This document shows, in pieces, positions 1-59,352 of a DNA stretch of 64,000 bases. Numbering within the stretch: the first letter of the stretch is position 1; every line of letters starts with the position of its first letter. This DNA comes from Perna viridis (Eukaryota), in NCBI GenBank assembly GCA_037379345.1, contig CM074519.1, positions 34,684,103-34,748,102 on the forward strand. Reading direction: 5' to 3'. The translations under genes and the position numbers were made by a program. Below the pieces are notes generated by a model. The model had not been told where the DNA came from and did not search any database. It saw only the letters and a program-made list of their open reading frames with translations.

Positions 1-284
1 CTTTTGACAAAACATTAGTTTGTAGAGAGGCAAAAAGAAAATGCACTATATTTTTATGGCATCCATGTTTTGACGTACACCCGCTCAGGGATATGCAATA
101 CGATACTGGTACCTTATATGTGTACCAATAAACAACATTTAGAAACTATACTCTAAGAAATATCAACAGAAGTTTCATGGGTGTCATCTTAATTTGATTT
201 CAACCGATGTGATTATTCTATTTCACAGATAAGAAATATATGTTTTAGAAAGACTTCACGTTCTACCAGACTGGTGGACGTCCT

Positions 285-1204
285 TATGGCAAGCCGAAGT
301 GGACAAAAATCAATATTTTGTAATATTAGAAAATGAATTTGTAATATTACAAAATCATTTTTTTAATATCAGAAAAGATTTTTTAATATTAGAAATTCAT
401 TTTGTAATATTAAAAACTCATTTTCTAATATTACAACTTCCTGATTTATTTATATTACAAAACATCAGACAATTTATAATATTACAAATTGAATATGTAA
501 TATTAGAAAATGAATTTGTAGTATTAGAAAATCACTTTGCAATATTTAAAAATAAGTCACATTATTTAAAATCACAAATGATTTTCTAATATTAAGAAAT
601 CGTAATTGAATATGACAAATTCATTTTCTAATATTAAAAAGTCGCTTTTTAATATTAGAAATTCAGTTGATTGTTTAATATTAAAAAAATTTTTGTGATA
701 TTAGAAATCTTATTTGTAATATTAGAAAACATTTATTTTGTAATATTAGAAAAAATACTTTTTTAATATTACAAAGTCATTTTTTTAATATTAGAAAAGA
801 TTTTGTAATATTAGAAATTCATTTTCTAATATTACAAATTCTTGATTTAGTAATAGTATAAAACATGACACATTATGTAAAATTACAAATTGAATTTGTA
901 ATATTAGAAAATCACTTTCCAATATTGCAAAATTACTCAGATTTTTTTTAATATCACAAAATGATTTTCTAACATTAAAAAATCGTAATTGAATACAAGA
1001 AGTCCATTTTCTAATATTAGAAAATCAATTTCTAATATTGAAAAATCGTTTTATATTAGAAATTCAATCGATTTTTTAATATTAAAACAGAGTTTTGTGA
1101 TATTAGAAATCTAATTTGTAATATTAGAAAATGAATTTTTAATATTAAAAAATCATTTTTTAATATTAGAAAGTACTTATTTTTGTCCACTTTGGCTTGC
1201 TATA
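285..1204. mobile_element. Non-autonomous DNA transposon with 6-bp TSD (IS3EU-like termini), interior of short TAATATTA-based subrepeats
   Basis: TIRs TATGGCAAGCCGAAGTGGACAAAAAT / ATTTTTGTCCACTTTGGCTTGCTATA; CGTCCT at 279-284 and 1205-1210. Confidence 0.85.
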
Positions 1205-7122: not shown

Positions 7123-7271
7123 AACATATGAAAATTTGGCTTTCATTACTCTATAACAATTTTATGCATTTCAAACTTTTAAGCCAATCTACTTCCATTT
7201 AACTGAATAAAATTGTACCTCCATAAAGGAGCTAAATAAGAGATGTTCCAGTACAGCATAGAAACACTTAC

Positions 7272-8417
7272 CATATGTTATAGCCAGGGTCTATTTTACT
7301 AGGCCTCTTTTTCTTGAAGTATCTTCTAATCAGTATAAAGCACATTACTAGTGTCAAGGCCACAGCAAATGTCAAGAGGATTGTCTTGACGACATTAAGG
7401 TTACATTTCTGGTAGCCAATCAGATCTTCACAATCATAGAAGACAGAACATGGATTTGGGTCACATTCATTGATGTCAGTCTGACACCATTGGTCGGTGT
7501 AACCAACATCACATTGGCAAACATACTTCTCAAAGGTCATTGCTCTCTCCTTGTCATCACACTGGGTAGAAGTTATATTGAGACAGTTACCATGGACACA
7601 TGGAGATAAAAGAATGTAAACATTAACCTCCATCATTTTAGTTGTAAATCTAGCTTGATCAAATCCCCTCACACTTAATGTCATCTGGCCATTGAATTCC
7701 TTATCAAGAGACAACCGAACTCTAAACATCTTTTTTCGTATGCCATGGAATTTGACAGGTTCAAAGGTCAAGTTGGCCAGCTGTTGGTTTGTTGTTCTCA
7801 TAGTGAAGTTTATTTCATTCGATGAGGGATCTACAAAGTCCACATCAAAGAATGTCACATGACCAAGATCATGTGACTTTGTCACATTTCCTTCCAGAAG
7901 TATAGACACAATCTTCATTCCACTACCTTGAACATCTATTTCTTCAAATACAAGGTCAGAATCAAATGGAAGAATTATAGGAGCATCATTTGCAGGTTTC
8001 ACATGTACTGTTATATTTCTGGTGCTAAAAAGTGGATGGAACGGTGGTAGAAGTCCTGTCTCCACAACTTTTACTACCACATAATCAATGCCATTGAAAT
8101 CTTTTGGAGGGAAGTAATGTATTTCCCCATCAGCAGTGATGTTTGCTTCTCCATGTTTCAATTCAACAATAGAGAATTCAACTGTATCCATTTCACCATC
8201 TAGGTACTGTATAGTCATAGTACCATTCTGATTCTGGGCATCATCCATATCTTCTGTGGCAAACAGGTCTGTTGTCAGTATCCTGGGCTGTGTGTTGGGG
8301 GCACGTCTGGACAAGCATTAAGGACCACATTCTTGGAACAGGAATATGGAGTGCAGCAGAACTTTTCTTCCTATCAGGATGATCAACTTCAAATTTCATG
8401 AACACTTCTTTACATAA
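7272..8417 (-). CDS. Exon 37: cadherin-like module(s), two EGF-like modules, TM helix and basic stop-transfer segment; apparent +1 frameshift near 8297-8301
   Basis: ORF 7268..8314: PNTQP...ATED...DGIDY...VKPANDAP (cadherin-like); SPCVHGNC...YVCQCDVGYTDQWC and DINECDPNPC (EGF, calcium-binding EGF start); ILLTFAVALTLVMCFILI-RRYFKKKR; ttccag|, |gtaagt. Confidence 0.9.
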
Positions 8418-24446: not shown

Positions 24447-24633
24447 CTACGGAAAAAAAATGAAAAATCAGTTATATTTAAGGCTTCACCATATTTTTTC
24501 TTGACCTTTCAACCGTTTTTAAAAAAGTAATAATACTTTCAGGAATTTTATTTCTTGTATGTGAATTAAAAATACAAGTCTGTAAAATGCTTTATGACCT
24601 GCTTGAAATTATATTGGAACAACAGGTAGGGCT

Positions 24634-24937: not shown

Positions 24938-25607
24938 ATGTCATCTAGGATTTTGTGGTATCACTTCTATCATTATTATATGAAAAGTATAATATAGCAA
25001 ATTGTTCATTGTACTTCGGGCCAATTGGTACATATGTATGTGGTAGTATATGAACAGTAACTCACCCTCTTAAGATATATAGCTACAGATGCTTTAGTTC
25101 ATATAATATTTTTTGGACAACCTACCTTTCCATATACTGCCATTTGGCCAACAGAGGAGGGATGAGATGCAAGGAACAACCCTAAAGGGGGAGGGGTTAC
25201 TACATTTAAAAATGGGTATATATATGGACTGATTGTGGTGGTGAAACTGGAACCTATTCATGACCATGAAATTTGGAAAACAATATCCTGCTATACTCAT
25301 GATACTGTTAAACTTTTATCATTGAATAATGTTAGCGTTAGTTAAACATGTGTTAAATTGGTTAAAATGGTTAAAACAGAGGGTGATTTGTAACAGACCC
25401 CCTGCCATCATAAAATTCAAATATGTAAGGCACAAATCCTTGCTATTTGTAGAAGTTATTGTTTCTTGAGTCATTTCATACTTACCATAAAATCTGCAAA
25501 AATTATAAAACTCAAAAGATACTGAATAGAACTTTCAAAGGTTACATGTATTAAAAGTTTTGTTCTTATAAGGGTGTAAGTCTCCCACTATGTGTAACTT
25601 GACTTAC

Positions 25608-25990
25608 CTGATAATGCATTCCATCCTCAGTATCATGAAGGTATTTAACCACTGGCGGTGTCTGGTCAATAACAAAACCATTTGAATCAACTATTGATGT
25701 TACATCAGCACCATTTTTAGCAGTCAGTCTGATGAACACATGGTCTCCATGCTTCATACTCAGAGAATAGTCTACAAACTTAGTTTTGAGTCCATTGTCA
25801 AAGGACTGAGGTGGGTCATCGTTAATGTGTACCTCCACTATGTATGATACAATTCCACTTTCTGGATCACTGAAACCACCCCACATAGCTGCTACCTCAG
25901 CAGTTTCTGATGAGAATTCCATATCATGGCCATGGCCAGCATCACCATCAACAATCCAGCCTTTCACAGGGACCGTTGTATCAATCAATA
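25608..25990 (-). CDS. Exon 27: VLIDTTVPVKGWIVDG...WGGFSDPESGIVSY...IDQTPP (FN3-like)
   Basis: ORF 25566..25988; tttcag|, |gtaagt. Confidence 0.9.
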
Positions 25991-28859
25991 CTGAAATAAA
26001 GCAGACATTAAACTAGATTTTAGGAACATTAATCAGCAACAACAACAACAACAACAAAAATCAACAACACAATGAGAAAATTTTCTAACAGAAAAGAATC
26101 TAATTTAAAAACATTACCAACATAGTTCTTTTTGTAGTTTGTTTATTTCTAAGCATGGAGAGTACAGACACACACTTAAAGTCACAATGTATAGAACTAA
26201 ACTACAAAGAAAGAAAACAAAAAAACAATGTTTCTTGCAAGAAATTAAAGTATTTGTTTTTATTGGCACCCAGTGCAGTTTGCAAGGGCAACCATCTTCT
26301 AAAATAATAGTATTCTTGTGTTAGAGTGGTATACATCTGACTATGTATTTCTATCTTAATACAGTATTTCAAATATTCCAAATGTGATAGGACAGTGGTT
26401 AGACATTCTTGATTAAATAATGTTAGTCTTTGAGAAAGGGAGGAGAGTGTATGGACATTTTGAGACTTTATAACTGATATTTTATCAAGTGAACTTTTGA
26501 TTAAATTAATACGTACAAGGGGTAAAACAATTATACAAAACAAGAGAACAGGTACAAAATAACTCCCAATACATAAGGATATTCCAATGTGGACAACAGA
26601 TAATAAAACAAATTATAAACACATACATGTACAAATCAAAAAGGTGTTACATGTACATGACATACCCATATACATAAACAACCATTAAGATGACAAAGGT
26701 GCATGAGGAAAATGGTAGTTGTACAGGTTCATTTATAATTAAGAGGGTAATATCAATAAATAAATGACAAATTGAAAGGGAGGAAATAAACATAATGAAT
26801 CAATGATAACATAGACATGAACAGGGGGTTTGACATAGTTGTTTTACATAATCGTTAGTATATATAGGGAGATAGGGAACTTAGAAAAGAGGACTAAGAA
26901 GGAACTTATTAAAGAGAGAACTTTAGAGATTTAAGTTCAAGAGGGTTTGCCCTCAAGAAGGGAGTCTTCTGACTCTTTCTCTCTTCTTATTGTTTGTACG
27001 TTGCTGTTGTATTGTGATTGCTGAATAATAAAAGTACCAGTCACACATCTGCTTATTGATCACGGTCATGGAAGGTAGCAGGAGCAGATCTTCATACTGT
27101 TATACAAAGCACTTTTCACACAAAGCATATTACCAATACATGCACATTTACTTATATATAATATTTCATGAAAAGAAAGATAAGATCAACAACATTATTT
27201 GGATCAATAATTTCTCATTAAAGAGACGAGAAAATTCCTATTTTTAGCCGAGAGAGATTTCCTTTTCTCACCCTGGGATTGAGACAGAGCAATTCTTTAC
27301 TGTAAAAAATGGAACAATTGAATAAAAAGTCATAATCATATTTTACCAATATTGAATGTGTGTATGAGATTTATTTTAAAATAACAATTTTTTTATCGAG
27401 AAGAATTGATAATTTATTATTTCTTGCAGTTTGTTTATACTATCTTGCATTGAGACATATAGGTGTTAGATTCTAAATATCTCAAATGCCAAAAAGTTTG
27501 TCTTTATATGTGTCATATTGGCTGTTTGTGGGTGATGTTGTGGTCTGTCCAAGTGCACTGTATCTAACAGACAACATCACGTACAACAGCCTTTATATGT
27601 AATTTGGTGGATTTCATGACCACATTTTTGTAACAGGGCTTTTACCCTTAGTCAGATGTCTAAGTCTGCAATCACAAAATATGAGGTAAATACTCTCTTT
27701 ACAGAAAGTACACATTTGCAATTCTTTTAAATCTCATACTTATACAACAAAAAGTTTGTTGCTAAAATCCTGTGTACTGTACTGAAAATTTTGAAGCTTA
27801 AGAGTTTTTGTAATGGATTAACTCAAAAAAAAAATATGGTTCCAATCTACTATCTCCTGTTCAAGTAAAATATCCCATTCTTGTTGAAGTATGATGGGAT
27901 TTTCTGAAATATTTGTAATAAATAACTTACAAAATTATTAACTATGTTTCTTCTCACTTTTCAACATTTCTACAATATTTTTTTTTTATTTCATAAATTT
28001 TTGCCTTTCCCTGTACTGATTATTTCCTATGTTCTGGGATTGCAGAGATCATAATATTCAACAACATTTGTTGTATACTTGGGTTCCATTACTAAATAAA
28101 TTAAACTAAGGCTAAAAAAAATATATGCTAGGTTCTCCGACACTGTTGCATCCCTAAAAAACCTCCCGCATCTGAAATTTTTTTTAATGGTAAAATCCGA
28201 AAAAAATTTTATATCCGTTCTGGAAATTTTCATATCCAGTCAAGAATCGACTTTTAATTAGTTATGGAATCATCTGCATGCTTGACAGAAATTTAAAAGT
28301 ATGATGCGAATGAGGCTTTTATTTAACACTGATCATTAAAAATGTTTGTCTTGTGGCGGAGAGATGGCTTTTATTTTTTGCCACATCTCATATTTTAGTT
28401 AAGTCTTAATGCCATGGAGAACTTTCCTGTACGTTTACAGATTTGTTCAATTCGATGAAACATCTGGAAAAAAACTTGCTTCTGATAAAAAAAAAGTAAA
28501 CCTCCCTACCACATCAATTATTAAAAAAAATGGCCTGAGAACTTGGCATTTTTTTTTGTATGACCTGAGAATACCTTAAATAACATCCAAATAAAGGTAC
28601 AATACTTTCTAGTTCTAATAGATAAAAGCTATAAGTATGCATTCTAGCCTACCTCCTGCTTTTGAAGACATTTAAATTGGATTATCTCCACCTTCTGAAC
28701 ACTTGACAATTTATCTACAGTAATAGAAAACTAGAACACTATATGGAAAGATAGAAATGGTGACTCCAACATTCCCCAAAACTTCCTTTGCAGAGTATAC
28801 AAATATGTAATGCTGCTTTCCTTCTGGCTTAAGGCCCAAAACATCCCACTGAATCTTAC

Positions 28860-29044
28860 CTCCATTGGAGTAGGCCTCTACCATTTTAGGATTGAGGGCA
28901 CTATTTTTGGCTCTAACAGAGGAGTAATAGGTTTGGTTATGTTTCAGCGGAACATGAGAGCAAGCCTGATTATGATCTCTGGAGTATGTTGTGTGTTTGA
29001 CAATGTCATCAAGTCCTGGTCTGGTTCCTACTCCCCATCTATAT
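28860..29044 (-). CDS. Exon 26: EYRWGVGTRPGLDDIV...LKHNQTYYSSVRAKNSALNPKMVEAYSNG (FN3-like)
   Basis: gatttag| ... |gtaaga; completes the FN3-like repeat begun in exon 25. Confidence 0.9.
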
Positions 29045-29495
29045 CTAAATCAAAGTGAAATAATAAATAAATTCAGACTAGAAATATTGACAGCATGTTC
29101 ACAAAAATAATATAACTAGTTTATAAATGCAATAAATAAAATAGATAAAATTAGTATTATTGAATTTTTGATATTACAGGAGCTGAATTTTTATCCATAT
29201 TGAAATAGTTAGAATCTCTCTACTTTCTCTAACTGACAAAATCTTATAAATAAATGCACTCAATATGAAAGAATCTCATTGAGAATGCTCACAATACCCC
29301 ACACATCCACTTATGCAATCTGACCATGGAAATATCAACATCTCTGTTAAAAATCTGCCCTATCAAAGCTTTTTTTACTCAAGAATGGTCAGCATAGGAG
29401 ATTTATTATACTTCCGAAAGTTGTAGCATGAACAAAATTTTAAAGATTTCATGATGTAAAATAAAACTGAAATTATACATTTCCCATATTATTAA

Positions 29496-30251
29496 CCCTT
29501 GTCGTGCTACACCCAGACCTGTTTGGGATTGGACCTGGTTCAGCTTTATTGGTTTTGGCAGTGTTAATCTTAGTTTAGCAATTTGTGTCCATCTGCAAGC
29601 AGCATGACTGTGCTTTCAAATGAGGCTATCTGACATAGAGTTTGTTAAAAAATAATGACTTGAAAGCTGAAAGAAAAGGTCATGAGTTTCCTCTGTGGAA
29701 AAAAATTACTTTTTGGGGGTTAGGGTTCATTTCTTGGACCCTTGCCAGAGCAGAATTAATCTCCAGTACTCTATTTTGCCTAGAAACTAAATAAGAATGA
29801 TTTCTGTCACCACGATTTCTATGTCAACCCCTTGTATTGACTACTTCTGGTTTTAGGCCAAACAGAGGTCAAAAATAGGAAAAAGTCGTCATTTTTTCAT
29901 ACGAGTGATCCTTCAGGGACTCCTGACCCCCAGACTCATGACTGTAACCCACTTTAATTGGCTTCAGTAGCCTACACGTTGTACAGGCTGTAGGACGAAT
30001 GTGCTTTGGTTCCTGATTTTTTTCCATTGAATACCACATGTAGCAAAAAATGATCAGAAATGGACAAAAATGACCGTTTTCAATTGACTGACCCATTTTT
30101 CTGTGTTGGCCCAGCTGACCTCACCCCGTGATCACCCACCTTTAATTTATATATAATAATCAGCATCGGTACCATAGTGTAACTAATTTGCATAAGTTTG
30201 CAAAATTTTGAAATTTAGACTTATGCTTAGAAATGCTCAGCATGACAAGGG
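29496..30251. mobile_element. piggyBac-like non-autonomous element
   Basis: TTAA|CCCTTGTCGTGCT ... AGCATGACAAGGG|TTAA. Confidence 0.85.
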
Positions 30252-30674
30252 TTAAGAAAAGTTTTCCAAATATTTATAAACTGAATGTCAATCATTGCTA
30301 TTGACTTCTGAAGTAAAAAAAAGATAATCAACAGTTAAACAGAATCCATCTTTACACACATTTACAAATTTTATTCCAGGTCACCTTTTTCCAAATTTTT
30401 AAACCTGTCCTGAAAATAGTTATTATTCAAAAACTATTTTAACAGAGTATTTATCCTACACTATAATAATACTCAAATAAAACTATTAGAGATGGATCAT
30501 CCATGGCCTCCTATATATGTAGATGTCTTGATCCATGGATGTCTCAAATTGTTCTGTTTGAAGTGACATATTTTAGAAATGGCTTGGTGAATATAACATT
30601 ATCTCTTTTTGATAAATCATGATACCTACTGATATCAAAGTCTTTAATTTTATAACATTCTCAAATGTGCTTAC

Positions 30675-30852
30675 TCATTAATGCCAGACTCTGGATCATA
30701 AAACTTCTTCCACTGAGCACATATTTTAGTGTTATCAGATTGATATGTCAGATCTTCATCCATGATCTCTCCATCTAACACATGACCAGCCACCGGAGCG
30801 GTTATGTCTATCAGAATAGGGTTGTCACTGTGAGCAGTTGTAAACAAATCAA
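30675..30852 (-). CDS. Exon 25: VDLFTTAHSDNPILIDITAPVAGHVLDG...WKKFYDPESGIN (FN3-like)
   Basis: ORF 30671..30868; ttttag|, |gtaagc. Confidence 0.9.
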
Positions 30853-30899
30853 CTAAAATAGACACCATCTTTTGTTATAGCATCTGATTAATCTACAAC

Positions 30900-31231
30900 T
30901 TGCCTACTTAGAACCACCCCCCATCCCCACCACATCCCTGCGTATTGATGGATCCTTGCCTACTTAGAACCACCCCCATCCCCACCACATCCCTGCGTAT
31001 TGATGGATCCTTGCCTACTTAGAACCACTCCCATCCCCACCACATCCCTGCGAATTGATGGATCCTTGCCTACTTAGAACCACCCCCATCCCCACCACAT
31101 CCTTGCGTATTGATGGATCCTTGCCTACTTAGAACCACCCCCATCCCCACCACATCCCTGCGTATTGATGGATCCTTGCCTACTTAGAACCACCCCCCAT
31201 CCCCACCACATCCCTGCCTATTGATGGATCC
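30900..31231. repeat. About 55-bp C-rich minisatellite, 6 copies
   Basis: Unit TTGCCTACTTAGAACCACCCCCATCCCCACCACATCCCTGCGTATTGATGGATCC. Confidence 0.95.
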
Positions 31232-31459
31232 TAAGATGGAGTGTCGAGTACATGTATGTTTGTGTGTGTCTACTCCGGCTTTCCCGTCTACTCCAGCTTT
31301 CACGTATTTGATTGTTCTGTATTTAATACCAACTGATAAGTAACAGACTGCATTGACTGCTGTAGATATGTAGATATTAGTAAAAGGTTGTTACATTACC
31401 TGCATTAGAACAGACAAAAATCTTGCACTTGATAATTTTATCATTTGTGTAACATTTAC

Positions 31460-31999
31460 CTTCGTTGACTGATCTGAGTCTTATCCAAACTGGTTCTCCT
31501 GATGCTAGATTAAGATCATCAACAACAATGAATGATTTATTTTCCTTATATGGATATGTAGAATATCCCCTTACATCAACATCATGTTTTGTGAGACCAA
31601 GTCCAAAGTCTATGTTTTTGACCTTTGACCCTAAGTCAAAGGTATCAAAGTACAAGGCCATTAGGTCAAAATCTTCATCAAATACAATGTCATCATCACT
31701 TATACCACGGGTGAAGACGGGTGGTGTGGTATCCACGGTGATAGGTGTAGAGTGGCATACGGTTGTTACCATGGCACCACCATGGATAACATTGTTGATA
31801 GCTTGGACAGTGATGTAGTATTTTCCATCAGGTAGATGTAGATTCCTAACATAGCCTGTATTGGTCCAGAACTTAGGGCTGGATAGGTGAGCATGGGGAT
31901 CTGAGAAATCAGCAATATCTGTACCACATACACTAGTACCCACTGCCCAGGTGTAACCATAGATACCAGTCTCATTGTCCTTAAAACCATTCCAGTTGC
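31460..31999 (-). CDS. Exon 24: GNWNGFKDNETGIYGYTWAVGTSVCGTDI... FN3-like repeats
   Basis: ORF 31377..31943 extended to ttcaag|; |gtaaat. Confidence 0.9.
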
Positions 32000-32364
32000 C
32001 TTGAATGTATTTAAGTGAAATAAATGTAAGTTTTTTTATTTTTAGTTACTCAAATTTGTAGATTATATTTCACCTTCACATTCTTGAAATCATACAAAAT
32101 ATTTAGGAGGAATAAAAAAGCGATTGTGTGCATTCATTAGCACAATAAATGCCAGAAAAATAAAAAAAACAATGATTTTCAATATAGAAATATTAAAATT
32201 TTAGTGATATTCATTTTGATTGCAATATGATATTTGTAATAATATAAGAAGAAATACTGTAAGTGAAGTAAAAAAGTACCTAGAATCATTACTTTAGTGA
32301 TTTGAATCCATGGAAACATTTAACTAATTGTTTGGAGTTCAGGTCAATTTTTAAGCAATGTCTC

Positions 32365-33385
32365 ACTCACCTGACATGAAATTATTAGCCAGTGTATACA
32401 GCGTGTCTACCCTCCTGCATGTCCATTAAACACAATAGTACTGCCTGGTCCATCAATGACTCACCTGACATGAAATGATTAGCCAGTGTATACAGTGTGT
32501 CTACTCCTCCTGCATGTCCATTAAACACAGTAGGACTTCCAGGTCCATCAATGACTCACCCGACATGAAATGATTAGCCAGTGTATACAATGTGTCTACT
32601 CCTCCTGCATGTCCATTAAACACAGTAGGACTTCCAGGTTCATCAATGACTCACCTGACATGAAATGATTAGCCAGTGTATACAGTATGTCTACCCTCCA
32701 TTAAATACAGTTGTACTGCCTGGTACATCAATGACTCACCTGACATGAAATGATTAGCCAGTGTATACAGTGTGTCTACCCTCCTGTATGTCCATTTAAC
32801 ACAGTAGTACTGCCTGGTACATCAATGACTCACCTGACATGAAATGATTAGCCAGTGTATAAAGTGTGTCTACCCCTCCCGTATGTCCATTAAACACAAT
32901 AGTACTGCCTGGTCCATCAATGACTCACCTGACATGAAATGATTAGCCAGTGTATACAGTGTGTCTACTCCTCCTGCATGTCCATTAAACACAGTAGGAC
33001 TTCCAGGTCCATCAACGACTCACCCGACATGAAATGATTAGCCAGTGTATACAATGTGTCTACTCCTCCTGCATGTCCATTAAACACAGTAGGACTTCCA
33101 GGTTCATCAATGACTCACCTGACATGAAATGATTAGCCAGTGTATACAGTATGTCTACACTCCATTAAATACAGTTGTACTGCCTGGTACATCAATGACT
33201 CACCTGACATGAAATGATTAGCCAGTGTATACAGTGTGTCTACCCTCCTGTATGTCCATTTAACACAGTAGTACTGCCTGGTACATCAATGACTCACCTG
33301 ACATGAAATGATTAGCCAGTGTATAAAGTGTGTCTACCCCTCCCGTATGTCCATTAAACACAGTAGTACTGCCTGGTCCATCAAT
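32365..33385 (-). repeat. Tandem array of 11 units (85-95 bp) derived from exon 23 plus its donor site
   Basis: Unit ends CATTTCATGTC(A/G)G|gtgagt; exon-end positions 32371, 32465, 32560, 32655, 32740, 32834, 32929, 33024, 33119, 33204, 33298. Confidence 0.95.
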
Positions 33386-33392
33386 TATCCTC
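33298..33392 (-). CDS. Exon 23: (R)IIDGPGSTTVFNGHTGGVDTLYTLANHFMS
   Basis: ttttgtag|gag NAGNAG acceptor, |gtgagt donor; bridges phase 2 to phase 1. Confidence 0.85.
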
Positions 33393-33624
33393 CTACAAAA
33401 TATCGGTATAATAAAGTTATGTTATAACTGTAATAATAATGAGTAAAGCTCACAAAGAAATACCATACATCCCTTATCATAATGTTCTGCTAACTGAAAG
33501 GACTTGTCATTTTGAGTGAGTCTTGCTATTGACTTCTCACTAAATAGAGTGTTAATTTTAAATTGTTATGGTTGTTGTCTCAGGGAACGTTGTTGTTTCA
33601 AACATCTATGCTTTATTATAATAC

Positions 33625-34842
33625 CTGTGGTTAGGTAGGTTGGTAAGCTCTATACATCTTTGTGTAATGGCTGCCTTACATCCATCAAATCTGATCTCAT
33701 CCAATGAAGCCCTATTGATTGGTCCTGGTTCTGGAGGGGTGTGATCAGCAATAGTCCCGTTTGATGATACATAGCCTTTATATCCTAAAACATTCTCTAT
33801 TTCTGCGTTCAGAATGTAAACAGTTCCATGCTGAAGGTCAAGGTTATGTTCTACAAATGAACTATAACCTACTCCAAGACGTTCATAGTGCTTGTAAGTA
33901 CCGCTGATTCTTACATCACTATTTGGTCCTTCGATTGTTGAATGTAGGTCACAGGTCTCAGAATGGTGCTCATAGTCAAACGACACACACTTTGTCCCAA
34001 AATGAAGACATTTTGCAGCACATTTCTCAACATGATCTGTTTTACTTGTTGTAATTTTATCACCTGTCAATTTTCCTTCTTTTCCGATAGTAAAGGACTT
34101 CATCTGAACAGATGCAGTAGAGTCCGTCCTTTCAGAAGTTGTTTGAAGACGTAGTGTTTGCCATGGTACAATCTCAGCACCAAACTGTCCTACTGAGGTC
34201 CCAACTGCTTCTAAATGACTGTCTACTAGGTCAGAATCATCAAATACAACTATGTTACCACTTATTTTATGTGGATGACTGGTGTAAGGGTAGGATTCAT
34301 CAATTCTACCATCAGGAACAGTGTTGTCATATGTTCTCAATTTACATTGTGTTGTTGTTTCATCACCCTGACTTATCTTAGCCTTGATTATAAAATATAA
34401 TGGAATCCCATAATGTTCCTTGCCAAGCTTAAGAGGAGCAGTAAGGGAGGAACCAGTCATTCCAGTCCATGCTAAAACATTAGTTCCAGATTCATGAGTT
34501 CCAATGGCATAAGATAATTTAATATCACTGACATTAGATTTGGCAGAGACTTCCAATAGGAATGCTGTATCTGTGGGGTCACGACCTTCAATCTGTTTGA
34601 CCTCACATCCCCCAGTAGGACTTGATCGTTTATTTCGTGGACTTACAGATGTAGGTTTCATGTCTACTTTACCAGGGCCCCTCTTTTTATGTGGTAATGT
34701 ATAGAGATTAGTTTTATAAGTTGGTGTCTTGTACTTCCAAAGGCAGGCATCAAACACAGTAACTGTTACAAAGAGAAGCCTCACCCTGGCATGTGCTTTT
34801 AGTCTTAGCTCTAGTGGAATAATAACTAGGTCAAGCTTGAAC
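33625..34842 (-). CDS. Exon 22: beta-rich region, RNKR site, FN3-like segment and PAN/Apple domain
   Basis: ORF 33606..34784; PAN signature CAAKC...KCVSFDY.....TCDL; ttttcag|, |gtatta. Confidence 0.92.
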
Positions 34843-44026: not shown

Positions 44027-44338
44027 CTCAACAGGAATAAAAGAAATCTTAGTTCATACCTTCTACAGCATTATCCATGAGTTTATATATCATGGAAAGT
44101 AGATCTCAACAGGAATAAAAATATTATTATTTAATACCTTCTACAGCATTATCCACGAGTGTATCTATCATGGAAAGTCGATCTCAACAGGGATAAAAAT
44201 TGTATTAGTTAATACCGTCTACAGCATTATCCATGAGTGTATCTATCATGGAAAGTCGATCTCAACAAGAATAAAAATATTATTAGTTAATACCTTCTAC
44301 AGCATTATCCATGAGTGTATCTATCATTGATAGTCGAT
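44027..44338 (-). repeat. 78-bp tandem repeat (real exon end plus 3 copies) derived from the exon 15 3' end and donor
   Basis: Exon-end positions 44294, 44216, 44138, 44060. Confidence 0.95.
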
Positions 44339-44553
44339 CCCCAGTAATGATATCAAACTCGTGAGCTTTCTTCAATCTACGTCTAATCTGATGAATTGGC
44401 ATCTCATCAGGATAGCCTAATGGTTCCTCTTGCAGTTTCTTAGCCACTTGTTTGGCTACATCATCCAGCTGTTGTACAAATGGAGTATCCTTTACAAGAT
44501 CTTTTATTGTAGAGAGAGACTTGTCATTCACATCAAAGGACGGGAGGATGGAT
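44294..44553 (-). CDS. Exon 15: SILPSFDVNDKSLSTIKDLV...SMIDTLMDNAVE
   Basis: ORF 44283..44531; ctttcag|, |gtatta. Confidence 0.85.
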
Positions 44554-45360
44554 CTGAAAGTAACTTAAAGGCTAACAATCTGACATACAGAACAGAAATA
44601 AACTGCAGGGATAGACCACACGATTGACCAGTCCCCTAAATTATAGCCTTTCATAAATCAGTGCTGTGTTACAGACATATTTGATTTCAAAATTCTTCGT
44701 GAGATTCTGTGCTGAAGATATTTTTCCATTGATGGTGGGCAAAACAAAATATATATCCAGCCCCTAATTCCAATAAGGATCAATGCTATGTACTATACAT
44801 GCAATAATTATCCTTGAAAATAAAATGACTAGATTTACCATCATTTCTTTTCCTAAACCAGAAACTTGTGAATTACAACCCATGGGTCTCTTAGTATACT
44901 TCTACTCCATGCCCCCTCCCTCCAAATGTGATGCCTCTCTGAAAAAAGTTTGAAAAACACGCTAGGTTGTTAAACTGCAAGTAATTACATTTTGTATGCC
45001 AATGATAAGAAATTGGTATGTCCTAAATGTGATCCCTTACTGAGGTTCTGATGAAAAGGGTGACGAAAGTGTTCGCCTTCCCATAATTACTTGATAAATA
45101 GATTTTTAAACAGTAAATAATAATTAAATTCAATAGTCTTGAAATTGGTGTGCATCTAATAGGTTCTGTAACTGAAGCTCTATACAAAACAGCAAGTGAT
45201 TGTACAAAGTAATTTCGGAGAAAATTGTGATTAAATATATGTTTCAAACAAATGGACTGTTATGCTTTGACATCAAATTTATCATATATGTAGATGGTTA
45301 TAATTGCTCTAATGCAATTGAGATCATTTCTTCCAAAAATAAATTTGAAAATTAACTTAC

Positions 45361-45980
45361 TTATAGGTCTTGGACAGCATGTTTTTATATTTGTCAAATT
45401 TTCCTGTCATGTTATGGAATTTGCCTTTAAGCTTTTCTGTCCATGGATGATTTTCTGGTGGTTGCTCAGCAGATCTTTTCCCTAGTTTATGACCAAGAGC
45501 ATGACTAAACGGGTGCCTAGATGACCCCCCATCACCACTACGATGGATATCCTCTTCATTATCATCAGGATCTCCACTCATATCTCCATTCTCAGTAACC
45601 ATGCCAATATAAAAGAAAGAGAAATCTTTACATAATGGTTTATGGCCAGGTTTAGGAAACCTTCGTTTTAAATAAGGTGAAGGGTCAATGTATTCGTAAC
45701 TATCTTCAGGTATAGACTCAGCATTTTCTGTATCGTTTGGTCTTTTTCTCATGGAAACAAACACAAAGCTTCCAGATTCACAATCTCCAGCATCCTTTGC
45801 TTTTCCAATTCTTTTGCCAGCTCTTAGGAACACCCCTTTCTTTTCTTCATCCAAATGACTGTCGACCTCAAATCCACTAACAACAACTTCATACATGACA
45901 ACATCAACTCTAAATGGACGGATAAGAACCTCTGTATCACTCAATCGGTAAACTGTACCAACGAAAGGATTAACAACTTT
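45361..45980 (-). CDS. Exon 14: KVVNPFVGTVYRLSDTEVLIRP...YIDPSPYL...KNMLSKTY (rest of LECT2/M23-like domain plus linker)
   Basis: ORF 45357..45944 extended to tttcag|; |gtaagt. Confidence 0.9.
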
Positions 45981-46096
45981 CTGAAAAAAAAAAAAAAAAA
46001 AAATTATTATTATTATTATTATTGTTACTATACAACTCTTAAAATGAATACAATATTCATTACATAAGCTCTAACAGTCATATAAAGGACTTTTAC

Positions 46097-46860
46097 AACA
46101 AGAGGCTTCTAGGAGACTGAATCACTCACCTGGTTAAATTTTGCATTATAAGGGCAATAAATTTAACAAGATTTTGTCCATCAATTTTGATTCAAGAAGA
46201 CTTAAGTAGGGCTTATGATAAGGATCATTTCAGCAATTGAAAGTTTCTTTTCTACCTTTTATAGTCTTCGTGATATTGGCTGAAAACTACAAAAAAAAAA
46301 GTCATTTTTCACCATTCAAGGGAATTAACTCCTACAAGGACTCATCTAACAACTTTTATCCCTGGAGACTTTTGTAGGCCATATAATGCAGGATACCCCT
46401 AGGAACATTCACACCAAGTTTGGTTCTAATTGGTCTGATAGTGTCAGAGAAGATTCTTGATGGCAATAACATTTAAAATAGCAACAACAAAAAAACATGG
46501 AAAAAGAGCAATAACTCCAACTTGGCTTCACAAATTAAAATGAAAATATCCCCACAGTTAGATCTCACCATGCTTAACATTTTTAAGTGATGGCAGAATT
46601 TGGATTATGCTAATGGTTTTGGAGAAATATGCAAAAACTACTGTCTGACCCCTTTGTTCTATATTTAGTAATGGCGGCTATGTTTTTTGATGGATCAAAA
46701 ATCCCCACATCAGTTCTATATCAGATACCCCAAGGAATATCCATACAAAGTTTGGTTCCAATTAGTCGAGTAGTGTCAGAGAAGAGTTTTGAACAATTGT
46801 TTAAGATGACAACAACTGATAACAATAGCTCACATGGTCTTTGACAAGGTGAGCTAAAAA
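46097..46860 (+). mobile_element. HINE/Helentron-like element, apparently full length
   Basis: aacaagaggct...ctcacctgg start and aggtgagctaaaaa end (subterminal inverted repeats); homologous to 50442-51168. Confidence 0.8.
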
Positions 46861-47642
46861 TATAAAAAATCTGACAACTGAATATAAACAAACTTTTGTA
46901 AATGCAATATATGAAAGAACAAGAGAGCTACATGTAAACTGTCAATGTACTTTTATTCTTTAGTCAGGACTTTAACAATGCCCCCTTCATTATCAACGAC
47001 ACGGGTATTCGAGGTAATAAAGGATCTTATTTATATAGGAGAAAAATTTGGTACTTCGAAAAGTGTCCAAGAAATCCCGGGTGTTTGAGCCATCAAAATT
47101 CAATTAAGTGAAGTTTGACTGTACAAAAAACTATAGAGCAAATTTAGTTGACAAGTGCAGTGGCCATCTTGCATTCTTTTCAAAAGTACTTTTATTCGTG
47201 GGTGCCAATATTCATGGTTTAGGGAAAACATTAGTGCATAGATTGAATTCATAGATTTAGCAAATATATCATATGAATAAAAGGGGTTTACTGAAACAAT
47301 GTAAAACATAAAAATTGGCACCCCAAAAATGCTTTCACAATATGAAGCCATAGGTTCTCTTGTCACAAAAAAAATGAAAAGTTCAACTGATATACAAATT
47401 AAATAAAAATACTATAAGTCGAAAACAAATCTAGGATCATGGTAAGCAAAAAAAAAAAAGTTAAAAAAAGGGCAAATCTAAGACAAAAACATATCCAAGA
47501 ACACTATACAGAGTCCACTGTCCATGTGGACCAATTTCATTTTCAAAATATCAAAGCTAGATTCAACTTACTGAAAATGTTTTTTTTAAATAGACAAAAA
47601 AAGTAGACCAATTTAAACACAGGGGCTTAAATCAATATAATA

Positions 47643-47848
47643 TACTGTGAAAGTACTTTAATTCGTGGATACCAATTTTCATGGATCAGGGAAGAAATAC
47701 AAGTTCATGGATTCTTTAATTCATGGTTTTGAAGTTTTCAGTATATACATCAATGGGAATCTACTATTCATTGGGAACCAAATTCGTGGTTTGACCTACC
47801 CACAAAAACCATGAAAATTGGTATTCAAGATAAGTAGTACTTTCACAG
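47643..47848. mobile_element. Small MITE (Tc1/mariner-like)
   Basis: TIRs (ta)CTGTGAAAGTACT / AGTACTTTCACAG. Confidence 0.65.
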
Positions 47849-48193
47849 AATACATGCAGTATATCAAGAATTTATACATGCAGTAAATCAAGAATCTTAA
47901 GATATTCAAGTTTCAAACTAAACCCCAATCAAGTTGGCTTGATTACATGAATAAGCACTTTATACAAAGAGTTGAAAAATGTTATATTTTGGTTCTAATA
48001 TTTAAGTGGTTTTGGCAACAACCCCCAACATGAAAATCAGTCCAAACCTTCTTTTTTCAGTATTGAACCTTTCTGTAAAATTCCATTGATATAAAATTTC
48101 AGAGCAATATCAAGTAATTGCATGCATACTATGAATTCACTTTGAATCATGTTCAAGAAGAATGTAATATAAACTGTGTCAGTACAGACAAAC

Positions 48194-48368
48194 CTTAAAT
48201 ATCTTTCTTTTAAAGTTGAGATGAAGCCCAAACCTGCCTTTCTCATCAATTTGAGAGTATTCCCCACAACCACAGCTCTCTGACTCACATGGTGCTGGTA
48301 TTTTAGGAAACTTACGATGGAACTTAGATCCAAATAATTTCTGCAAGTAGTATTTCCCTTTGTTGACA
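48194..48368 (-). CDS. Exon 13: VNKGKYYLQKLFGSKFHRKFPKIPAPCESESCGCGEYSQIDEKGRFGLHLNFKRKIFK (start of LECT2/M23-like domain)
   Basis: ORF 48179..48442; cattacag|, |gtttgt. Confidence 0.85.
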
Positions 48369-49347
48369 CTGTAATGAAAGTGACAAAACTGGCAATAGAT
48401 AATGAGGTAATAGTTCTCTTTATGTTTCAGCACCTTCCACATTGATGAAAAACCTAATGTGTGGTTTTAAGAAAAGCAATCATTTTAAGTAGTACTCCAG
48501 GTAAGAATTAAGCAAAATGTGATTCATGGTTGGAAAGCCTACATATTTCTATTTTTGATATTTTGTTTGAAATGTCATTGTAAACTTAAAGTTACATGTG
48601 GTTTTTGATATAACCCATGTTCATAGGAGATAAAAATTATATAGAAGGCACAGTAGATTTCTAAATTAAGGGAGATAACTCTGTAAATGACACTCAAATA
48701 CATCAGAATCTATTGGAGTTTCAATGTTGATTATCTCCCAAGAGCAGGCAGATTGGAATGAATAATAACACATTTCATAGTATAGACCCATAAAACAACT
48801 TAATTACAAAAATAAAAATATGTAGCCTTTTTTGGGGTGTATCACATTTTTCAGATTTTGCATGATTCTTACAAAGACAGCTACTTAACTACATTTAAAT
48901 AATAAAGACCTTATGGCAGTATATCTTCAAATCTAAATGCTTTTTAAGATTAAGAGAGACATTCTGAGCTATGTTAGAAATTTACATTTCAAGGAGTTGA
49001 AAAATGTTTTTAAGTACCATTTTGACATGCAAGAGTTATTCTAGATAACAGTAATAATGCTATTCCTTTTATAATGAGGCAAGCAATAAATTTACTCGGA
49101 GACAATCTTAGTTTTGAGTGATCTAATTTCATCTTATCTGAAGTCAGACATCATCCTTCCACAAAAAAAAAAAAAAAAAATTAACAGAAGTTCCAGTCAT
49201 CTGAATCCATACAATAAGACCCAAATGTATGTATTTATCTCTAAACTTTAAGTTTGTAGGGAGGAGAAAAATATTCTGCCCATGCATGAAAACAAGTCCA
49301 CTATAGATTAAAATATTGAAATTTGAATTTAAACTTCTGTTACATAC

Positions 49348-49511: not shown

Positions 49512-50038
49512 CTTCAAGAAAAGAAACAAACAATTCATATAAAAATGTAGGTAAAGCCATAAATGAAAGTAGTAAAATTAATTCTTTATATCTTAATATG
49601 TTTTTACGGCATCTCTAAGATTTTAACCCCTCCTGTTCTAGGACTTGTACTGAGTTTTACGCTTGGACTTCCTAGTACTTCTTGGCTAATTAAACATGAA
49701 AGGCATAAAAAATCTACAATTTTTCAGCATGGTTGTCACATTTTGTTTCTATTAGAGATCGCTTTAGGTTAAACCAGTAAACTACTCTTCAAAGTTATTT
49801 CTTTTAAATATGTAACCTTCATCAAGAGGCAACACATTTATACTGCAATTATTCTGTTTGAGCAACCTTAAAGCATCGACAGTATTATTTATTGATGATA
49901 AACCATAAAGGACAGCATATCACTCTTTAGATGTGTGTAATTTCCTACCCTTGCATGATCTACCTGTTTAGTTTACTGTCCCAATGGGAACCACATGTGG
50001 GGTAGAACAATAATAAGCTAGTCATTCTTCATACATAC

Positions 50039-50433
50039 ATTGACATTAAATCCATCAGTAATTTGGACAGGTGCCAAATCCTGAACATGTTGTTTGGCTG
50101 ATCCTTGATGGTGCATCAGGTTCTTAAATTCTTCCCAAGTTTCCCTCATGGTCTCATTCAAATGGAGTTTCAAGTCTTTCAATTTTTCCCACGTTTCCAT
50201 CATTTCCTCGTTGGAGTCTGGTTTCAGGTCTTTCAATTTTTCCCAAGTTCCCTTCATTTTCTCACTCAAAACAGGTTTCATGTCTTTTAGTTTTTCCCAA
50301 GATTCCCTCATTTTCTCATTCAAATCATGTTTCATGTCTTTAAATTCTTCCCAACTTTCCACCATTATCCCATTCAAATCATGAAGTATTCCATGGATTT
50401 CTTCCCCAGGGTGGAACCAATATGGCGTTCTTC
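50039..50433 (-). CDS. Exon 11: GRTPYWFHPGEEIHGILHDLN... with about 5 copies of an 18-aa amphipathic repeat (WEKLKDLKPxLNExMRET)
   Basis: ORF 50018..50377; ccatatag|, |gtatgt. Confidence 0.85.
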
Positions 50434-50441
50434 CTATATGG

Positions 50442-51168
50442 AAACAAGAGGCTCCCAGGAGCCTGAATCGCTCACCTGGTTAAATTTTTGCTTTTTAAGG
50501 GCAATAACTCTCTAACAAGGAGTTGCCAGACATCTCTTCATACTGAATATTTTTGATCCATATCAGAATTTGGCTAAATCTAACAGTTAAGGAGATATGT
50601 GCAAAAAACTACTGTCTGACCCCTATGTTCTATTTTTAGTAATGGTGGCCATGTTTTTCAACAGGTCAAAAATCCTCACAACAGTTCTATGCACAATATC
50701 CCAAGAAACATTCATACCAAATTTGGTTCCAATTGGTCAGGTGGAGAAGATTTTTGAAAGAAATAACATTAAAAATAGCAAAAATTGTTGACAAAGGGCA
50801 ATAACTCCAACATGGCTTAACATATCAAAATGAAAATTTGACCACAGATAGATCTCATCATGCTGAACACTTTTAATCCATGTCAAAATTGGTTAAACCT
50901 AATGGTTTAGTAGATATATGTGAAAAAAAATACTGTCTGACCCCTCTGTTCTATTTTTAGTAACATCGACCATGAATTTACATGGATCAAAAATCTTTAC
51001 AACAGTTCTATGCAGGATACCCCAAGGAACATTCATACCAAGTTTGGTTCCAATTGGTCGAGTAGTTTCAGAGGAAAAGAGTTTTGAAAATTTTTTAACG
51101 ACGACAGACAGCGACCAACGCCAAGTGATGGCAATAGCTCACATGGCCTTCAGCAAGGTGAGCTAAAA
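50442..51168 (+). mobile_element. HINE/Helentron-like element abutting the exon 11 acceptor
   Basis: aaacaagaggctcccaggagcctgaatcgctcacctgg ... gctcacatggccttcagcaaggtgagctaaaa. Confidence 0.85.
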
Positions 51169-58549: not shown

Positions 58550-58787
58550 CTGAAAAATACATAAATGAGATAAATTACATTACATTTTTAAAAATGAACA
58601 ATGACAAAAGACACTGTTTGTTTTTATGCTACCAAAAACCCCAAATCCAACAAAACCAAAAATAAAAAAAAAACAGATGAAGATAGACAGACTGACACTT
58701 CCAAAACAACTTTATAAGAGAACATATGCAGATAATCATTGATATCATTCAGTTTTAGCTGCATGCTATGTTAAATATTGAACCCAT

Positions 58788-58922
58788 CTTATTGTGAGTG
58801 AACTGCATCAGAGCATGAGCTTTGGTCCTCCTCAGTTCAGCATTGGCCTTTATATATACCTCATTACAAGTGAAATGCCTCAGAGCATGGGCAGCTGTCC
58901 TCCTCAGTTCTGCATTGGCCTT
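58788..58922 (-). repeat. 72-bp duplication of the exon 4 3' end
   Basis: KANAELRRTAAHALRHFTCNE followed by KANAELRRTKAHALMQFTHNK. Confidence 0.9.
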
Positions 58923-59092
58923 GTTCAGTTCTAGATAGGATGTTATATGTCTCAGTGATCGGGGATGTCCAGCATTCCCAAGACAATGTAACAATGTTCT
59001 CTTTAAAGCTACATGAAGATCACGGTCATGGTAACTTATTCCTCTGCCAACTGACCTTTTCTCTCTTGGTTTGACAATGCCACTGAACTCAC
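58860..59092 (-). CDS. Exon 4: ...REKR SVG...LLHCLGNAGHPRSL...ELRRTAAHALRHFTCNE (LLTP alpha-helical domain)
   Basis: ORF 58755..59126; tttaaag|, |gtatat; the LGNAG and R-x-AA-x-ALR motifs are typical of vitellogenin/apoB/MTP helical domains. Confidence 0.9.
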
Positions 59093-59352
59093 CTTTAAAA
59101 AAAAAAAACAATATAGCATTGAGCATAAATCACACATGGGTACCCTTTGCCCATCTCTTTACATATTCATGTACCAGAATATCTTTTTAGAACTAAAAAA
59201 TAATTGGTATTCCCTTCCTCTATCCATGTCAACTGTAAAGTAAAGCTAATGAAAACCCTAAATTCATTCAGACTAAACTTAAAATATAGCAGGTACACAA
59301 TAGTATTACCTAAAAATTATTCACTGAAAGTTTCATATACAGTACCTTAATA

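What the first reader, a model, noticed from the sequence alone, without database searches (positions are those of the whole stretch)
45660..48310. Hidden LECT2/peptidase-M23-like domain with zinc ligands replaced
Exons 13 and 14 splice to CESESCGCGEYSQ...GRFGLHL...VVNPFVGTV...FLRAGKRIG...SFVFVS...YIDPSPYL. This lines up in order with vertebrate LECT2 as I recall it: GCGQYS, HQGVDI, VYAPFTGMI, IKKGEKLG, SHVHIE, DPTAYL. The M23 motif HxxxD reads RxxxH here and HxH reads FxF, so the domain is probably zinc-free and catalytically dead. M23 folds bind or cut peptidoglycan and LECT2 is an immune ligand, so a pseudo-peptidase next to a lipid-binding module suggests microbe or glycan recognition (inference). 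It is invisible in the ORF track because an intron splits it.
Basis: partly seen in the sequence, partly recalled or inferred. Interest (0 to 1): 0.8.

Follow-up and report, generated by a model that had tools for sequence, protein, structure and literature searches.

The report
Zinc-free LECT2-like domain in mussel giant protein
Two spliced exons of a giant mussel membrane-protein gene encode a domain with the fold of bacterial M23 cell-wall peptidases and of the vertebrate signalling protein LECT2, but with every zinc-binding residue replaced; it is a conserved "dead enzyme" module that standard domain databases do not detect.

Summary
RNA-derived contigs from two studies join window 45980|48194 exactly, so exon 13 is 48194-48368(-) and exon 14 is 45361-45980(-).

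Three lines of evidence place the encoded segment in the M23/LECT2 fold:
- A domain-only sequence profile of the family ranks LECT2 first among all PDB sequences (E 0.0024).
- Language-model features of the window's own exon 14 return only M23 clusters.

Pfam's Peptidase_M23 model misses the family.

In the window, LECT2's zinc ligands H35 and D39 read R and H. The H118-x-H120 motif (H120 is the third ligand) reads F-x-F. The family is known only from molluscs and carries every intermediate state. One paralogue in this same genome keeps the full HxxxD + HxH set. The zinc-free copy is under purifying selection (dN/dS about 0.19).

The domain lies between a Vitellogenin_N-like head and a long Ig/FN3-like stalk in one protein of about 4,000-5,000 residues. 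It most likely serves as a non-catalytic binding module. I never joined the two exons; each was searched by reference.

The parts
48194..48368 (-). Exon '13' (175 nt). Encodes ...FGSKFHRKFP...CESESCGCGEYS...GRFGLHL...KRKIFK, the N-terminal third of the M23/LECT2-like domain.
   Evidence: Splice sites read. RNA-type contigs end or join exactly at 48368 and 48194. 69% identical to P0008 residues 203-251.
45361..45980 (-). Exon '14' (620 nt). Encodes the rest of the domain plus a conserved acidic/helical tail of about 100 residues. It ends in the donor AA|gtaagt, not in a real stop.
   Evidence: Contigs X1 record 1 and X2 records 8 and 9 cover 45361-45974 and jump to 48194. 53% identical to P0008 residues 257-468. 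Homologous fragments P0001-P0007.
45981..48193 (-). Intron that splits the domain (2,213 nt). It carries dispersed repeats.
   Evidence: GT..AG ends. RNA depth is 0 at its unique flanks and very high only over repeat segments.
48194..48328 (-). N-terminal part of the M23/LECT2-like domain. Corresponds to P0008 residues 214-256.
   Evidence: The VIA-align range 214..355 of the P0008 model matches LECT2 residues 1..133. Mapping by BLASTP.
45666..45980 (-). C-terminal part of the M23/LECT2-like domain. Corresponds to P0008 residues 256-357.
   Evidence: ESM Atlas features of residues 1-118 of this exon return only M23-named clusters.
48254..48289 (-). CESESCGCGEYS: cysteine-rich N-terminal motif. 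GCGEYS matches LECT2's GCGQYS (residues 22-27).
   Evidence: HMM alignments of the family profile to LECT2 chains 9non and 5b0h. Coordinates.
48221..48235 (-). R-F-G-L-H: the position of the M23 HxxxD motif (LECT2 H35...D39). His is replaced by Arg (48233-48235) and Asp by His (48221-48223).
   Evidence: Register. LECT2 ligands H35, D39, H120 from PMC8039541. Coordinates.
45951..45971 (-). NPFVGTV: the M23 'P-x-x-G-x-V' strand (LECT2 APFTGMI).
45804..45821 (-). AGKRIG: the M23 'xG-x-x-IG' turn (LECT2 KGEKLG, MepM RGDRIA).
45759..45767 (-). F-V-F: the position of the M23 HxH motif (LECT2 H118-V-H120). Both His are replaced by Phe, and this is invariant within the window's clade.
   Evidence: F72 and F74 invariant; MepM HLH aligns with FLF.
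45669..45692 (-). YIDPSPYL: conserved C-terminal M23/LECT2 motif (LECT2 ...DPTAYL).
58755..59126 (-). Upstream exon ORF of the same gene with a Vitellogenin_N / HEAT-like match.
   Evidence: PF01347 E 1.2e-5, 24.6 bits against a cut-off of 24. Homologues P0040 and P0044 score 48.5 and 38.6 bits.
44283..44531 (-). ORF containing the next downstream exon of the same gene.
   Evidence: 57% identical to P0008 residues 479-557, directly after the domain.
7268..8314 (-). ORF containing the last coding exon of the giant gene: cadherin/Big_9-like domain, EGF-like cysteines, a transmembrane helix and a short cytoplasmic tail.
   Evidence: The large ORF 17567-20896 is colinear with P0014 residues 2770-3809.

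Best explanation
Exons 13 and 14 encode one globular domain of about 145 residues with the M23 metallopeptidase fold, of the LECT2 type. It sits in the extracellular head of a giant, mollusc-specific type-I membrane protein with this layout: Vitellogenin_N-like region, long helices, this domain, PAN, many Ig/FN3-like repeats, cadherin-like domain, EGF, transmembrane helix.

In this gene every position equivalent to a zinc ligand or HxH histidine is replaced: H to R, D to H, and H-x-H to F-x-F. The position of the second catalytic histidine of active M23 enzymes is not His anywhere in the family. The domain therefore cannot bind the M23 zinc or cut peptidoglycan (shown from sequence and alignment).

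The two invariant phenylalanines probably fill the former metal site and keep the beta-sandwich stable without zinc (inference). Purifying selection shows the domain is still used.

By analogy with LECT2 and with the bacterial degenerate LytM factors EnvC, NlpD, DipM, Csd2 and SpoIIQ, it most likely acts as a non-catalytic binding surface. A protein partner is more likely than a microbial one (inference).

Confidence is split: about 0.9 that this is a zinc-free M23/LECT2-type fold, and about 0.5 that it works as a protein-binding module.
For: Splicing and expression: RNA-type contigs from two studies join 45980|48194.

Sequence: the domain-only profile A5 ranks LECT2 first of 177,635 PDB sequences (E 0.0024) and M23 LytU next. 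The larger profile A4 gives LytU E 0.006 and LECT2 E 0.013 as its top three.

Features: ESM Atlas gives M23 clusters for the window's exon 14 (0.92, 30 of 30) and for P0027 (0.95).

Ligand states: alignment A3, the hhalign register against MepM, and LECT2 ligands from PMC8039541.

Constraint: dN/dS is 0.19 (domain part of exon 14) and 0.29 (exon 13) against the in-genome paralogue. F-x-F is invariant in the clade.

Ancestral state: relatives keep HxGVD and HxH. These are the Batillaria proteins P0027 and P0034, and the own-genome locus on C12 at 23.90 Mb.

Gene context.

Degenerate M23 folds acting in protein-protein contacts: PMC9662197.
Against: - The window's own spliced domain was not folded or profile-searched as one chain, because joining was left out by rule. 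The structural evidence rests on a homologue that is 53-69% identical.
- Pfam PF01551 does not recognise the family: no hit for the exons, and one weak hit (E 0.042) among 33 members.
- hhalign against a single E. coli MepM is not significant (E 0.12).
- LECT2's Z lead over LytM is under 1, which counts as a tie. A specific kinship to LECT2 rather than to M23 in general therefore rests mainly on the shared N-terminal CxGCGxY motif and the E 0.0024 profile hit.
- No evidence of any kind bears on the binding partner.
- Two raw RNA-seq runs showed no reads on these exons, so expression is tissue- or stage-restricted.
Confidence: 0.72

Rival explanations
1. The domain is a microbe or glycan (peptidoglycan) recognition module, and the giant protein is a pattern-recognition receptor.
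For: The M23 fold evolved to hold peptidoglycan peptides in its groove. LECT2 has immune roles. The protein is a surface protein, and bivalves have expanded immune receptor repertoires (general knowledge). The fold is supported.
Against: Degenerate M23 domains with known function (EnvC, NlpD, Csd2, SpoIIQ, LECT2) bind proteins (PMC9662197). The groove residues that hold the substrate around the zinc are replaced here. There are no expression data after infection, and no binding data.
Confidence: 0.15
2. The domain is a purely structural spacer in the head of the giant protein, with no ligand of its own.
For: No partner is known. It is embedded between long helices and a disordered acidic tail.
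Against: Surface motifs are strongly conserved across bivalves and gastropods and dN/dS is about 0.19. Constraint of that strength on a spacer would be unusual but not impossible.
Confidence: 0.1
3. The match is a chance line-up of short motifs, or the fold belongs to another 'duplicated hybrid motif' family such as EIIA-Glc rather than M23.
For: Pfam, NCBIfam and single-sequence PDB searches are blank. EIIA-Glc chains appear low in the Foldseek list (ranks 48-50).
Against: The top structural hits are uniformly M23/LytM and LECT2. The profile search ranks LECT2 and LytU first. Relatives carry the complete, correctly spaced M23 signature HxGVD...PxxGxV...GxxIG...HxH...DP.
Confidence: 0.02
4. 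The domain is an active zinc peptidase that uses alternative ligands.
For: One His is present at the Asp position (R-F-G-L-H).
Against: That His is not conserved: it is Tyr in the tandem paralogue and Asp in Mytilus edulis. Both HxH histidines are Phe. The second catalytic His position is not His in the family.
Confidence: 0.01

Closest known systems
LECT2 (leukocyte cell-derived chemotaxin 2; PDB 5B0H)
   Different: LECT2 is a free secreted protein of about 133 residues that binds one zinc through H35, D39 and H120 (PMC8039541). Here the domain is embedded in a membrane protein of about 4,000-5,000 residues and all three ligand positions are replaced (R, H, F). Identity is only about 19%. The disulfide pattern was not established.
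Degenerate LytM (dLytM) factors of bacteria: EnvC, NlpD, DipM, Csd2, SpoIIQ
   Different: These are bacterial periplasmic or cell-wall proteins that activate amidases or build channels. They have no N-terminal Cys motif and no homology outside the domain.
Active M23 peptidases (LytM, lysostaphin, LytU, MepM, LasA)
   Same: Same fold and the same order and spacing of motifs. Some mollusc family members still carry HxxxD and HxH.
   Different: The window's protein has none of the zinc ligands and the family lacks the second catalytic His. Pfam PF01551 does not detect it.
Large lipid transfer proteins (vitellogenin, apolipophorin, MTP)
   Same: The same polypeptide begins with a Vitellogenin_N-type region.
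   Different: No known LLTP carries an M23/LECT2-like domain, a transmembrane anchor or an FN3/cadherin/EGF stalk. The open beta-sheet lipid-cavity domains were not detected.

Membership tests
Peptidase_M23 (Pfam PF01551 / MEROPS M23) | Match to the family HMM above the curated cut-off | tested here: not met
   No hit for either exon or for homologues P0008, P0027, P0034, P0040, P0044, P0014, P0049. One of 33 members reaches E 0.042. No six-frame hit in the own genome.
Peptidase_M23 (Pfam PF01551 / MEROPS M23) | M23 beta-sandwich fold | tested here: met
Peptidase_M23 (Pfam PF01551 / MEROPS M23) | HxxxD zinc-binding motif | tested here: not met
   The window reads R-F-G-L-H (48221-48235). The motif is present in relatives P0027, P0034, P0043 and in own-genome locus L010.
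Peptidase_M23 (Pfam PF01551 / MEROPS M23) | HxH motif (catalytic His plus third zinc ligand) | tested here: not met
   The window reads F-V-F (45759-45767), invariant in its clade. H-I-H or H-F-H is kept in P0027, P0034, P0038, L008 and L009.
Peptidase_M23 (Pfam PF01551 / MEROPS M23) | Second catalytic histidine (LytM H260 position) | tested here: inconclusive
   The HMM alignment to LytU puts a variable, non-His position opposite the YLHL histidine. The register in that loop is uncertain.
Peptidase_M23 (Pfam PF01551 / MEROPS M23) | Peptidoglycan endopeptidase activity | not testable with these tools
   Needs recombinant protein and a zymogram or muropeptide assay.
LECT2 family | Structure superposes on LECT2 over the whole chain | tested here: met
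LECT2 family | Significant sequence-profile relation to LECT2 | tested here: met
   Profile A5 against the PDB: LECT2 is first, E 0.0024, 20.7 bits. Profile A4: E 0.013. The aligned stretch covers only LECT2 residues 16-59, so the support is modest.
LECT2 family | N-terminal Cys loop with GCGxYS before the HxxxD position | tested here: met
   The window reads CESESCGCGEYS and LECT2 reads C-DRH-GCGQYS. Bacterial M23 hits do not align here.
LECT2 family | Structural zinc bound by H35, D39, H120 | tested here: not met
   The equivalent positions are R, H and F in the window. Ligands are from PMC8039541.
LECT2 family | Free, secreted single-domain protein of about 130-150 residues | tested here: not met
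   The domain is internal to a giant gene colinear with the 4,640-residue P0014, where the domain lies at 778-968.
LECT2 family | Three conserved disulfides | tested here: inconclusive
   The family has invariant Cys before the GxY motif, before the HxH position and after the DP motif.

The most novel reading that the evidence does not exclude
Molluscs keep a whole family of LECT2-type domains built into giant surface proteins. One genome shows every step from a complete zinc site to none. If this family is the sister group of free LECT2, it would show how the animal cytokine and guidance cue LECT2 relates to a multidomain ancestor. The head that joins a lipoprotein-type module to a LECT2-like module could then be a new kind of membrane-anchored sensor for microbial or lipid ligands.
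Probability: 0.12. Interest if true: 0.75.

Novelty: new variant of a known kind. Interest (0 to 1): 0.5.

Why it matters
M23 domains are overwhelmingly bacterial. A 2022 review calls LECT2 the sole mammalian member described (PMC9662197).

Here a LECT2-type M23 domain turns up as a built-in module of giant mollusc membrane proteins. Those proteins are annotated only as 'uncharacterized' and Pfam does not see the domain. Within one genome the paralogues run from a full zinc site to a zinc-free F-x-F core that is still under selection. That makes a natural series for asking how a metal-stabilised fold becomes metal-independent. The question is relevant to LECT2 amyloidosis, where zinc loss destabilises the protein (PMC8039541).

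It also gives a first functional handle on a large family of mollusc proteins that has no annotation.

Tried and rejected
- Single-exon searches gave nothing: Pfam and NCBIfam and phmmer against the PDB.
- AlphaFold on exon 14 alone with 8 close sequences failed (mean pLDDT 38), so that model was not used.
- Profile A2, made mostly of exon-14 fragments and lacking the N-terminal third, found no M23 or LECT2 entry in the PDB. Profiles that include the exon-13 part did.
- hhalign of A3 against the single E. coli MepM sequence gave the expected register but no significance (E 0.12). I did not build a deeper M23 profile.
- A PF01551 six-frame search of the own genome found nothing. This says little, because matching is exon by exon.
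- The conserved 'stop' after exon 14 first suggested a C-terminus. I rejected that: the TAA lies inside the donor gtaagt, and homologues and RNA contigs continue.
- L001 (Logan contig) first looked like a related species. It is identical to the tandem paralogue in this genome.
- Literature searches for LECT2 or M23 in molluscs or invertebrates, or together with vitellogenin, found nothing relevant.
- Raw RNA runs X18 and X19 had no reads on the exons.
Full report
**What is in the sequence.**
The finding lies in a minus-strand gene. Reading the DNA and computing the splice sites gives:
- exon 13 = window 48194-48368 (acceptor cattacag|TGTCAA, donor TTTAAG|gtttgt);
- exon 14 = window 45361-45980 (a 20-T tract, then cag|AAAGTT; donor CTATAA|gtaagt).

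The 13/14 junction is phase 0. The apparent stop after ...SKTYK is the TAA inside the donor AA|gtaagt, so the gene continues.

**RNA support.**
I laid two contig sets that the tool guesses to be RNA, from two studies, and two raw RNA-seq runs on 45250-48450. Contig X1 record 1 (991 nt) covers 45361-45974 and continues at 48194. X2 record 9 does the same. The six letters not placed lie in the T-run that the tool skips. X1 record 7 ends at 48368 and runs on into upstream sequence. Depth is zero in the unique intron flanks. High depth inside the intron is confined to dispersed repeats. The splice model is therefore confirmed at all four exon ends. The two raw RNA runs had no reads on the exons, so expression is not ubiquitous.

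**Gene context.**
- An upstream exon ORF (58755-59126) matches Vitellogenin_N (E 1.2e-5).
- The ORF at 44283-44531 is 57% identical to residues 479-557 of the Mytilus edulis protein P0008, directly after the domain.
- The 1,109-codon ORF at 17567-20896 is colinear with residues 2770-3809 of the 4,640-residue scallop protein P0014.
- The ORF at 33606-34784 has a PAN domain.
- The last ORF (7268-8314) has a cadherin/Big_9-like match, EGF-like cysteines and a transmembrane helix.

Nearly the whole window is thus one giant type-I membrane protein gene.

**Relatives.**
The word search with exon 14 found seven fragments that are 52-68% identical. A profile search of 1.8 billion representatives found 40 proteins. 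Every one that carries a name is a mollusc 'uncharacterized' or 'hypothetical' protein: Mytilus edulis, Ylistrum balloti, Argopecten irradians, Pecten maximus, Pinctada imbricata, Potamilus streckersoni, Haliotis asinina and H. rubra, Batillaria attramentaria. In the full-length members (3,300-5,100 residues) the domain sits at about 780-1150, after a Vitellogenin_N region.

**Is it an M23/LECT2 fold?**
Single-sequence tests are blank: Pfam, NCBIfam and PDB phmmer. Pfam Peptidase_M23 gives one weak hit (E 0.042) among 33 members. Three other lines of evidence agree with each other.

Instead I folded the closest database homologue that contains both parts, P0008 (Mytilus edulis CAG2210632.1), which is 69% and 53% identical to exons 13 and 14. 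I used a 42-sequence family alignment. The domain came out with pLDDT 90-95.
- Foldseek against the PDB returns only M23/LytM proteins at E<=1e-3: PrgK LytM domain, EnvC, lysostaphin, LytM, DipM, EnpA, LasA and others.
- The helical-bundle hits in the same list belong to the long helices at residues 1-212 of the model and are not informative.

*2. Sequence profiles.*
- A profile of nine members that contain the exon-13 part gives, as the top three of 177,635 PDB sequences, LytU M23 (E 0.006, aligned across the whole domain) and two LECT2 entries (E 0.013).
- A domain-only profile (292 positions) puts LECT2 first at E 0.0024 and LytU next.

*3. Language-model features.*
- Residues 1-118 of the window's own exon 14 return 30 of 30 M23-named clusters at 0.92.
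- The Batillaria relative returns M23 clusters at 0.95.
- These are leads, not tests, but they apply to the window's own letters.

**Motif register and metal site.**
The HMM and hhalign alignments fix the register shown here.

| LECT2 | Window |
|---|---|
| C18-DRH-G-C23-GQYS | CESESCGCGEYS |
| H35-Q-G-V-D39 | R-F-G-L-H |
| APFTGMI | NPFVGTV |
| KGEKLG | AGKRIG |
| H118-V-H120 | F-V-F |
| DPTAYL | DPSPYL |

LECT2 binds one structural zinc through H35, D39 and H120 (PMC8039541). All three positions are replaced in the window, and so is H118. The His at the D39 position is not conserved: it is Tyr in the tandem paralogue and Asp in Mytilus edulis. The position opposite the second catalytic His of active M23 enzymes is variable and not His in the family (register uncertain). 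LECT2 also lacks that residue (PMC9662197). The domain is therefore zinc-free and non-catalytic. This follows from the sequence, given the alignment.

**Do relatives keep the ligands?**
The family alignment shows a graded series:
- H-P-G-V-D with H-I-H or H-F-H in the Batillaria proteins P0027 and P0034;
- T-x-G-V-D with F-I-H or Y-I-H in scallops, abalone and Potamilus (P0014, P0040, P0042, P0044, P0024);
- R-K-G-V-D with F-L-F in Mytilus edulis;
- R-F-G-L-H with F-V-F in the window.

The window's own genome has four loci:
- the window itself;
- a convergent tandem copy about 68 kb away on the same contig (R-L-G-V-Y, F-L-F);
- a locus on contig 12 at 5.82 Mb (I-E-G-V-D, H-I-H);
- a locus on contig 12 at 23.90 Mb with the complete set (H-P-G-V-D, H-I-H).

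The zinc site is therefore ancestral to the family and was lost stepwise in the lineage of this gene.

**Is the dead domain still in use?**
Against the tandem paralogue, dN/dS is 0.19 over the 105 domain codons of exon 14 and 0.29 over exon 13. Within the clade the two replacing Phe and the flanking V-x-M-R-K, Y-I-D-P-x-P-Y-L and other positions are invariant. This is purifying selection on a pseudo-enzyme, not decay.

**How it probably works.**
*Shown:* the fold (on a homologue), the splice, the loss of ligands, the constraint and the position in a giant surface protein.

*Inferred:*
- The two Phe fill the old metal pocket and make the fold independent of zinc. LECT2 itself is destabilised by zinc loss (PMC8039541).
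- The domain serves as a binding surface. Degenerate M23 folds with known function work through protein-protein contacts: EnvC and NlpD with amidases, Csd2 with Csd1, SpoIIQ with SpoIIIAH, and LECT2 with receptors (PMC9662197). A protein partner is therefore my first choice.
- 'Lipid-binding neighbour' is only partly supported. Only the Vitellogenin_N region is detected, and it is separated from this domain by several hundred helical residues.

**Comparison and novelty.**
The domain works like LECT2 and the dLytM factors. It fails the membership tests for an M23 peptidase proper: no Pfam match, no HxxxD, no HxH. It also fails the tests for LECT2 proper: not a free protein, no zinc site. It does pass the fold test, a modest profile test and the N-terminal GCGxYS motif test.

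I found no paper describing a LECT2/M23-like domain in molluscs or next to a vitellogenin-type module. The database entries carry no domain annotation. I class it as a new variant of a known kind: a LECT2-type pseudo-M23 domain in a new architecture.

**Limits.**
- The fold evidence comes from a homologue, not from the window's own joined sequence.
- LECT2's structural lead over LytM is within the tie margin.
- Taxonomic range beyond molluscs is unknown, because many hits are unnamed fragments.
- Disulfide pairing and groove occlusion could not be read.
- Function is inferred by analogy only.

Noticed in passing
G000:C9:34615486-34616136 (+), locus L006 943-2142; about 68 kb left of the window: A convergent (tail-to-tail) tandem paralogue of the giant gene. 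It has its own exon 13/14 pair (about 74% identical in the domain part of exon 14), reads R-L-G-V-Y and F-L-F, and is identical to Logan protein P0001.
   Followed up: partly
G000:C12:23898416 (L010 about nt 7417) and C12:23900850-23901026 (L009 1501-1680): A more distant paralogous locus in the same genome. Its exons encode ...YSHPGVDLIAEPG... and ...NHIHLAMWRDGGSIDPTSFL..., which is the complete M23/LECT2 zinc-ligand set. The full gene was not reconstructed.
   Followed up: partly
G000:C12:5822202-5822567 (L008 about 725-1690): A third paralogous locus with I-E-G-V-D and N-H-I-H-F-A: first His lost, Asp and HxH kept. Here the domain is split into more exons than in the window.
   Followed up: partly
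window 46213-46850 and 47604-47817 (intron 13); also 50597-50791 and 50972-51166: Dispersed repeat copies inside introns with very high depth in RNA-type contigs (hundreds to thousands). They share ORF-like words (…IPQG.FIP.LVPIG.VVSE…) and are probably an abundant, transcribed transposon or MITE family.
   Followed up: no
window 50018-50377 (-): An exon ORF made of tandem helical repeats of about 17 residues (…WEKLKDLKP…). It gives a Pfam DUF3106-like hit at E 3.9e-6. It belongs to the long helical region between the Vitellogenin_N part and the M23-like domain.
   Followed up: no
window 14820-34784 (-): Very long exons (up to 1,109 codons) encode many repeats of about 100 residues, each ending in ...D.TPP..G. 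Pfam barely recognises them (weak fn3, PKD or Ig-like hits only). They may be an undescribed Ig-like repeat family that forms the stalk.
   Followed up: partly
window 45363-45665 (-), second half of exon 14: The roughly 100 residues after the domain (FPKPGH..C..FS.YYIGM..E.GDM.GD..., an acidic stretch, then a helix ...KFHNMTGKFDKYKNM...) are conserved across the clade. The model gives them low confidence and they match no known family.
   Followed up: no
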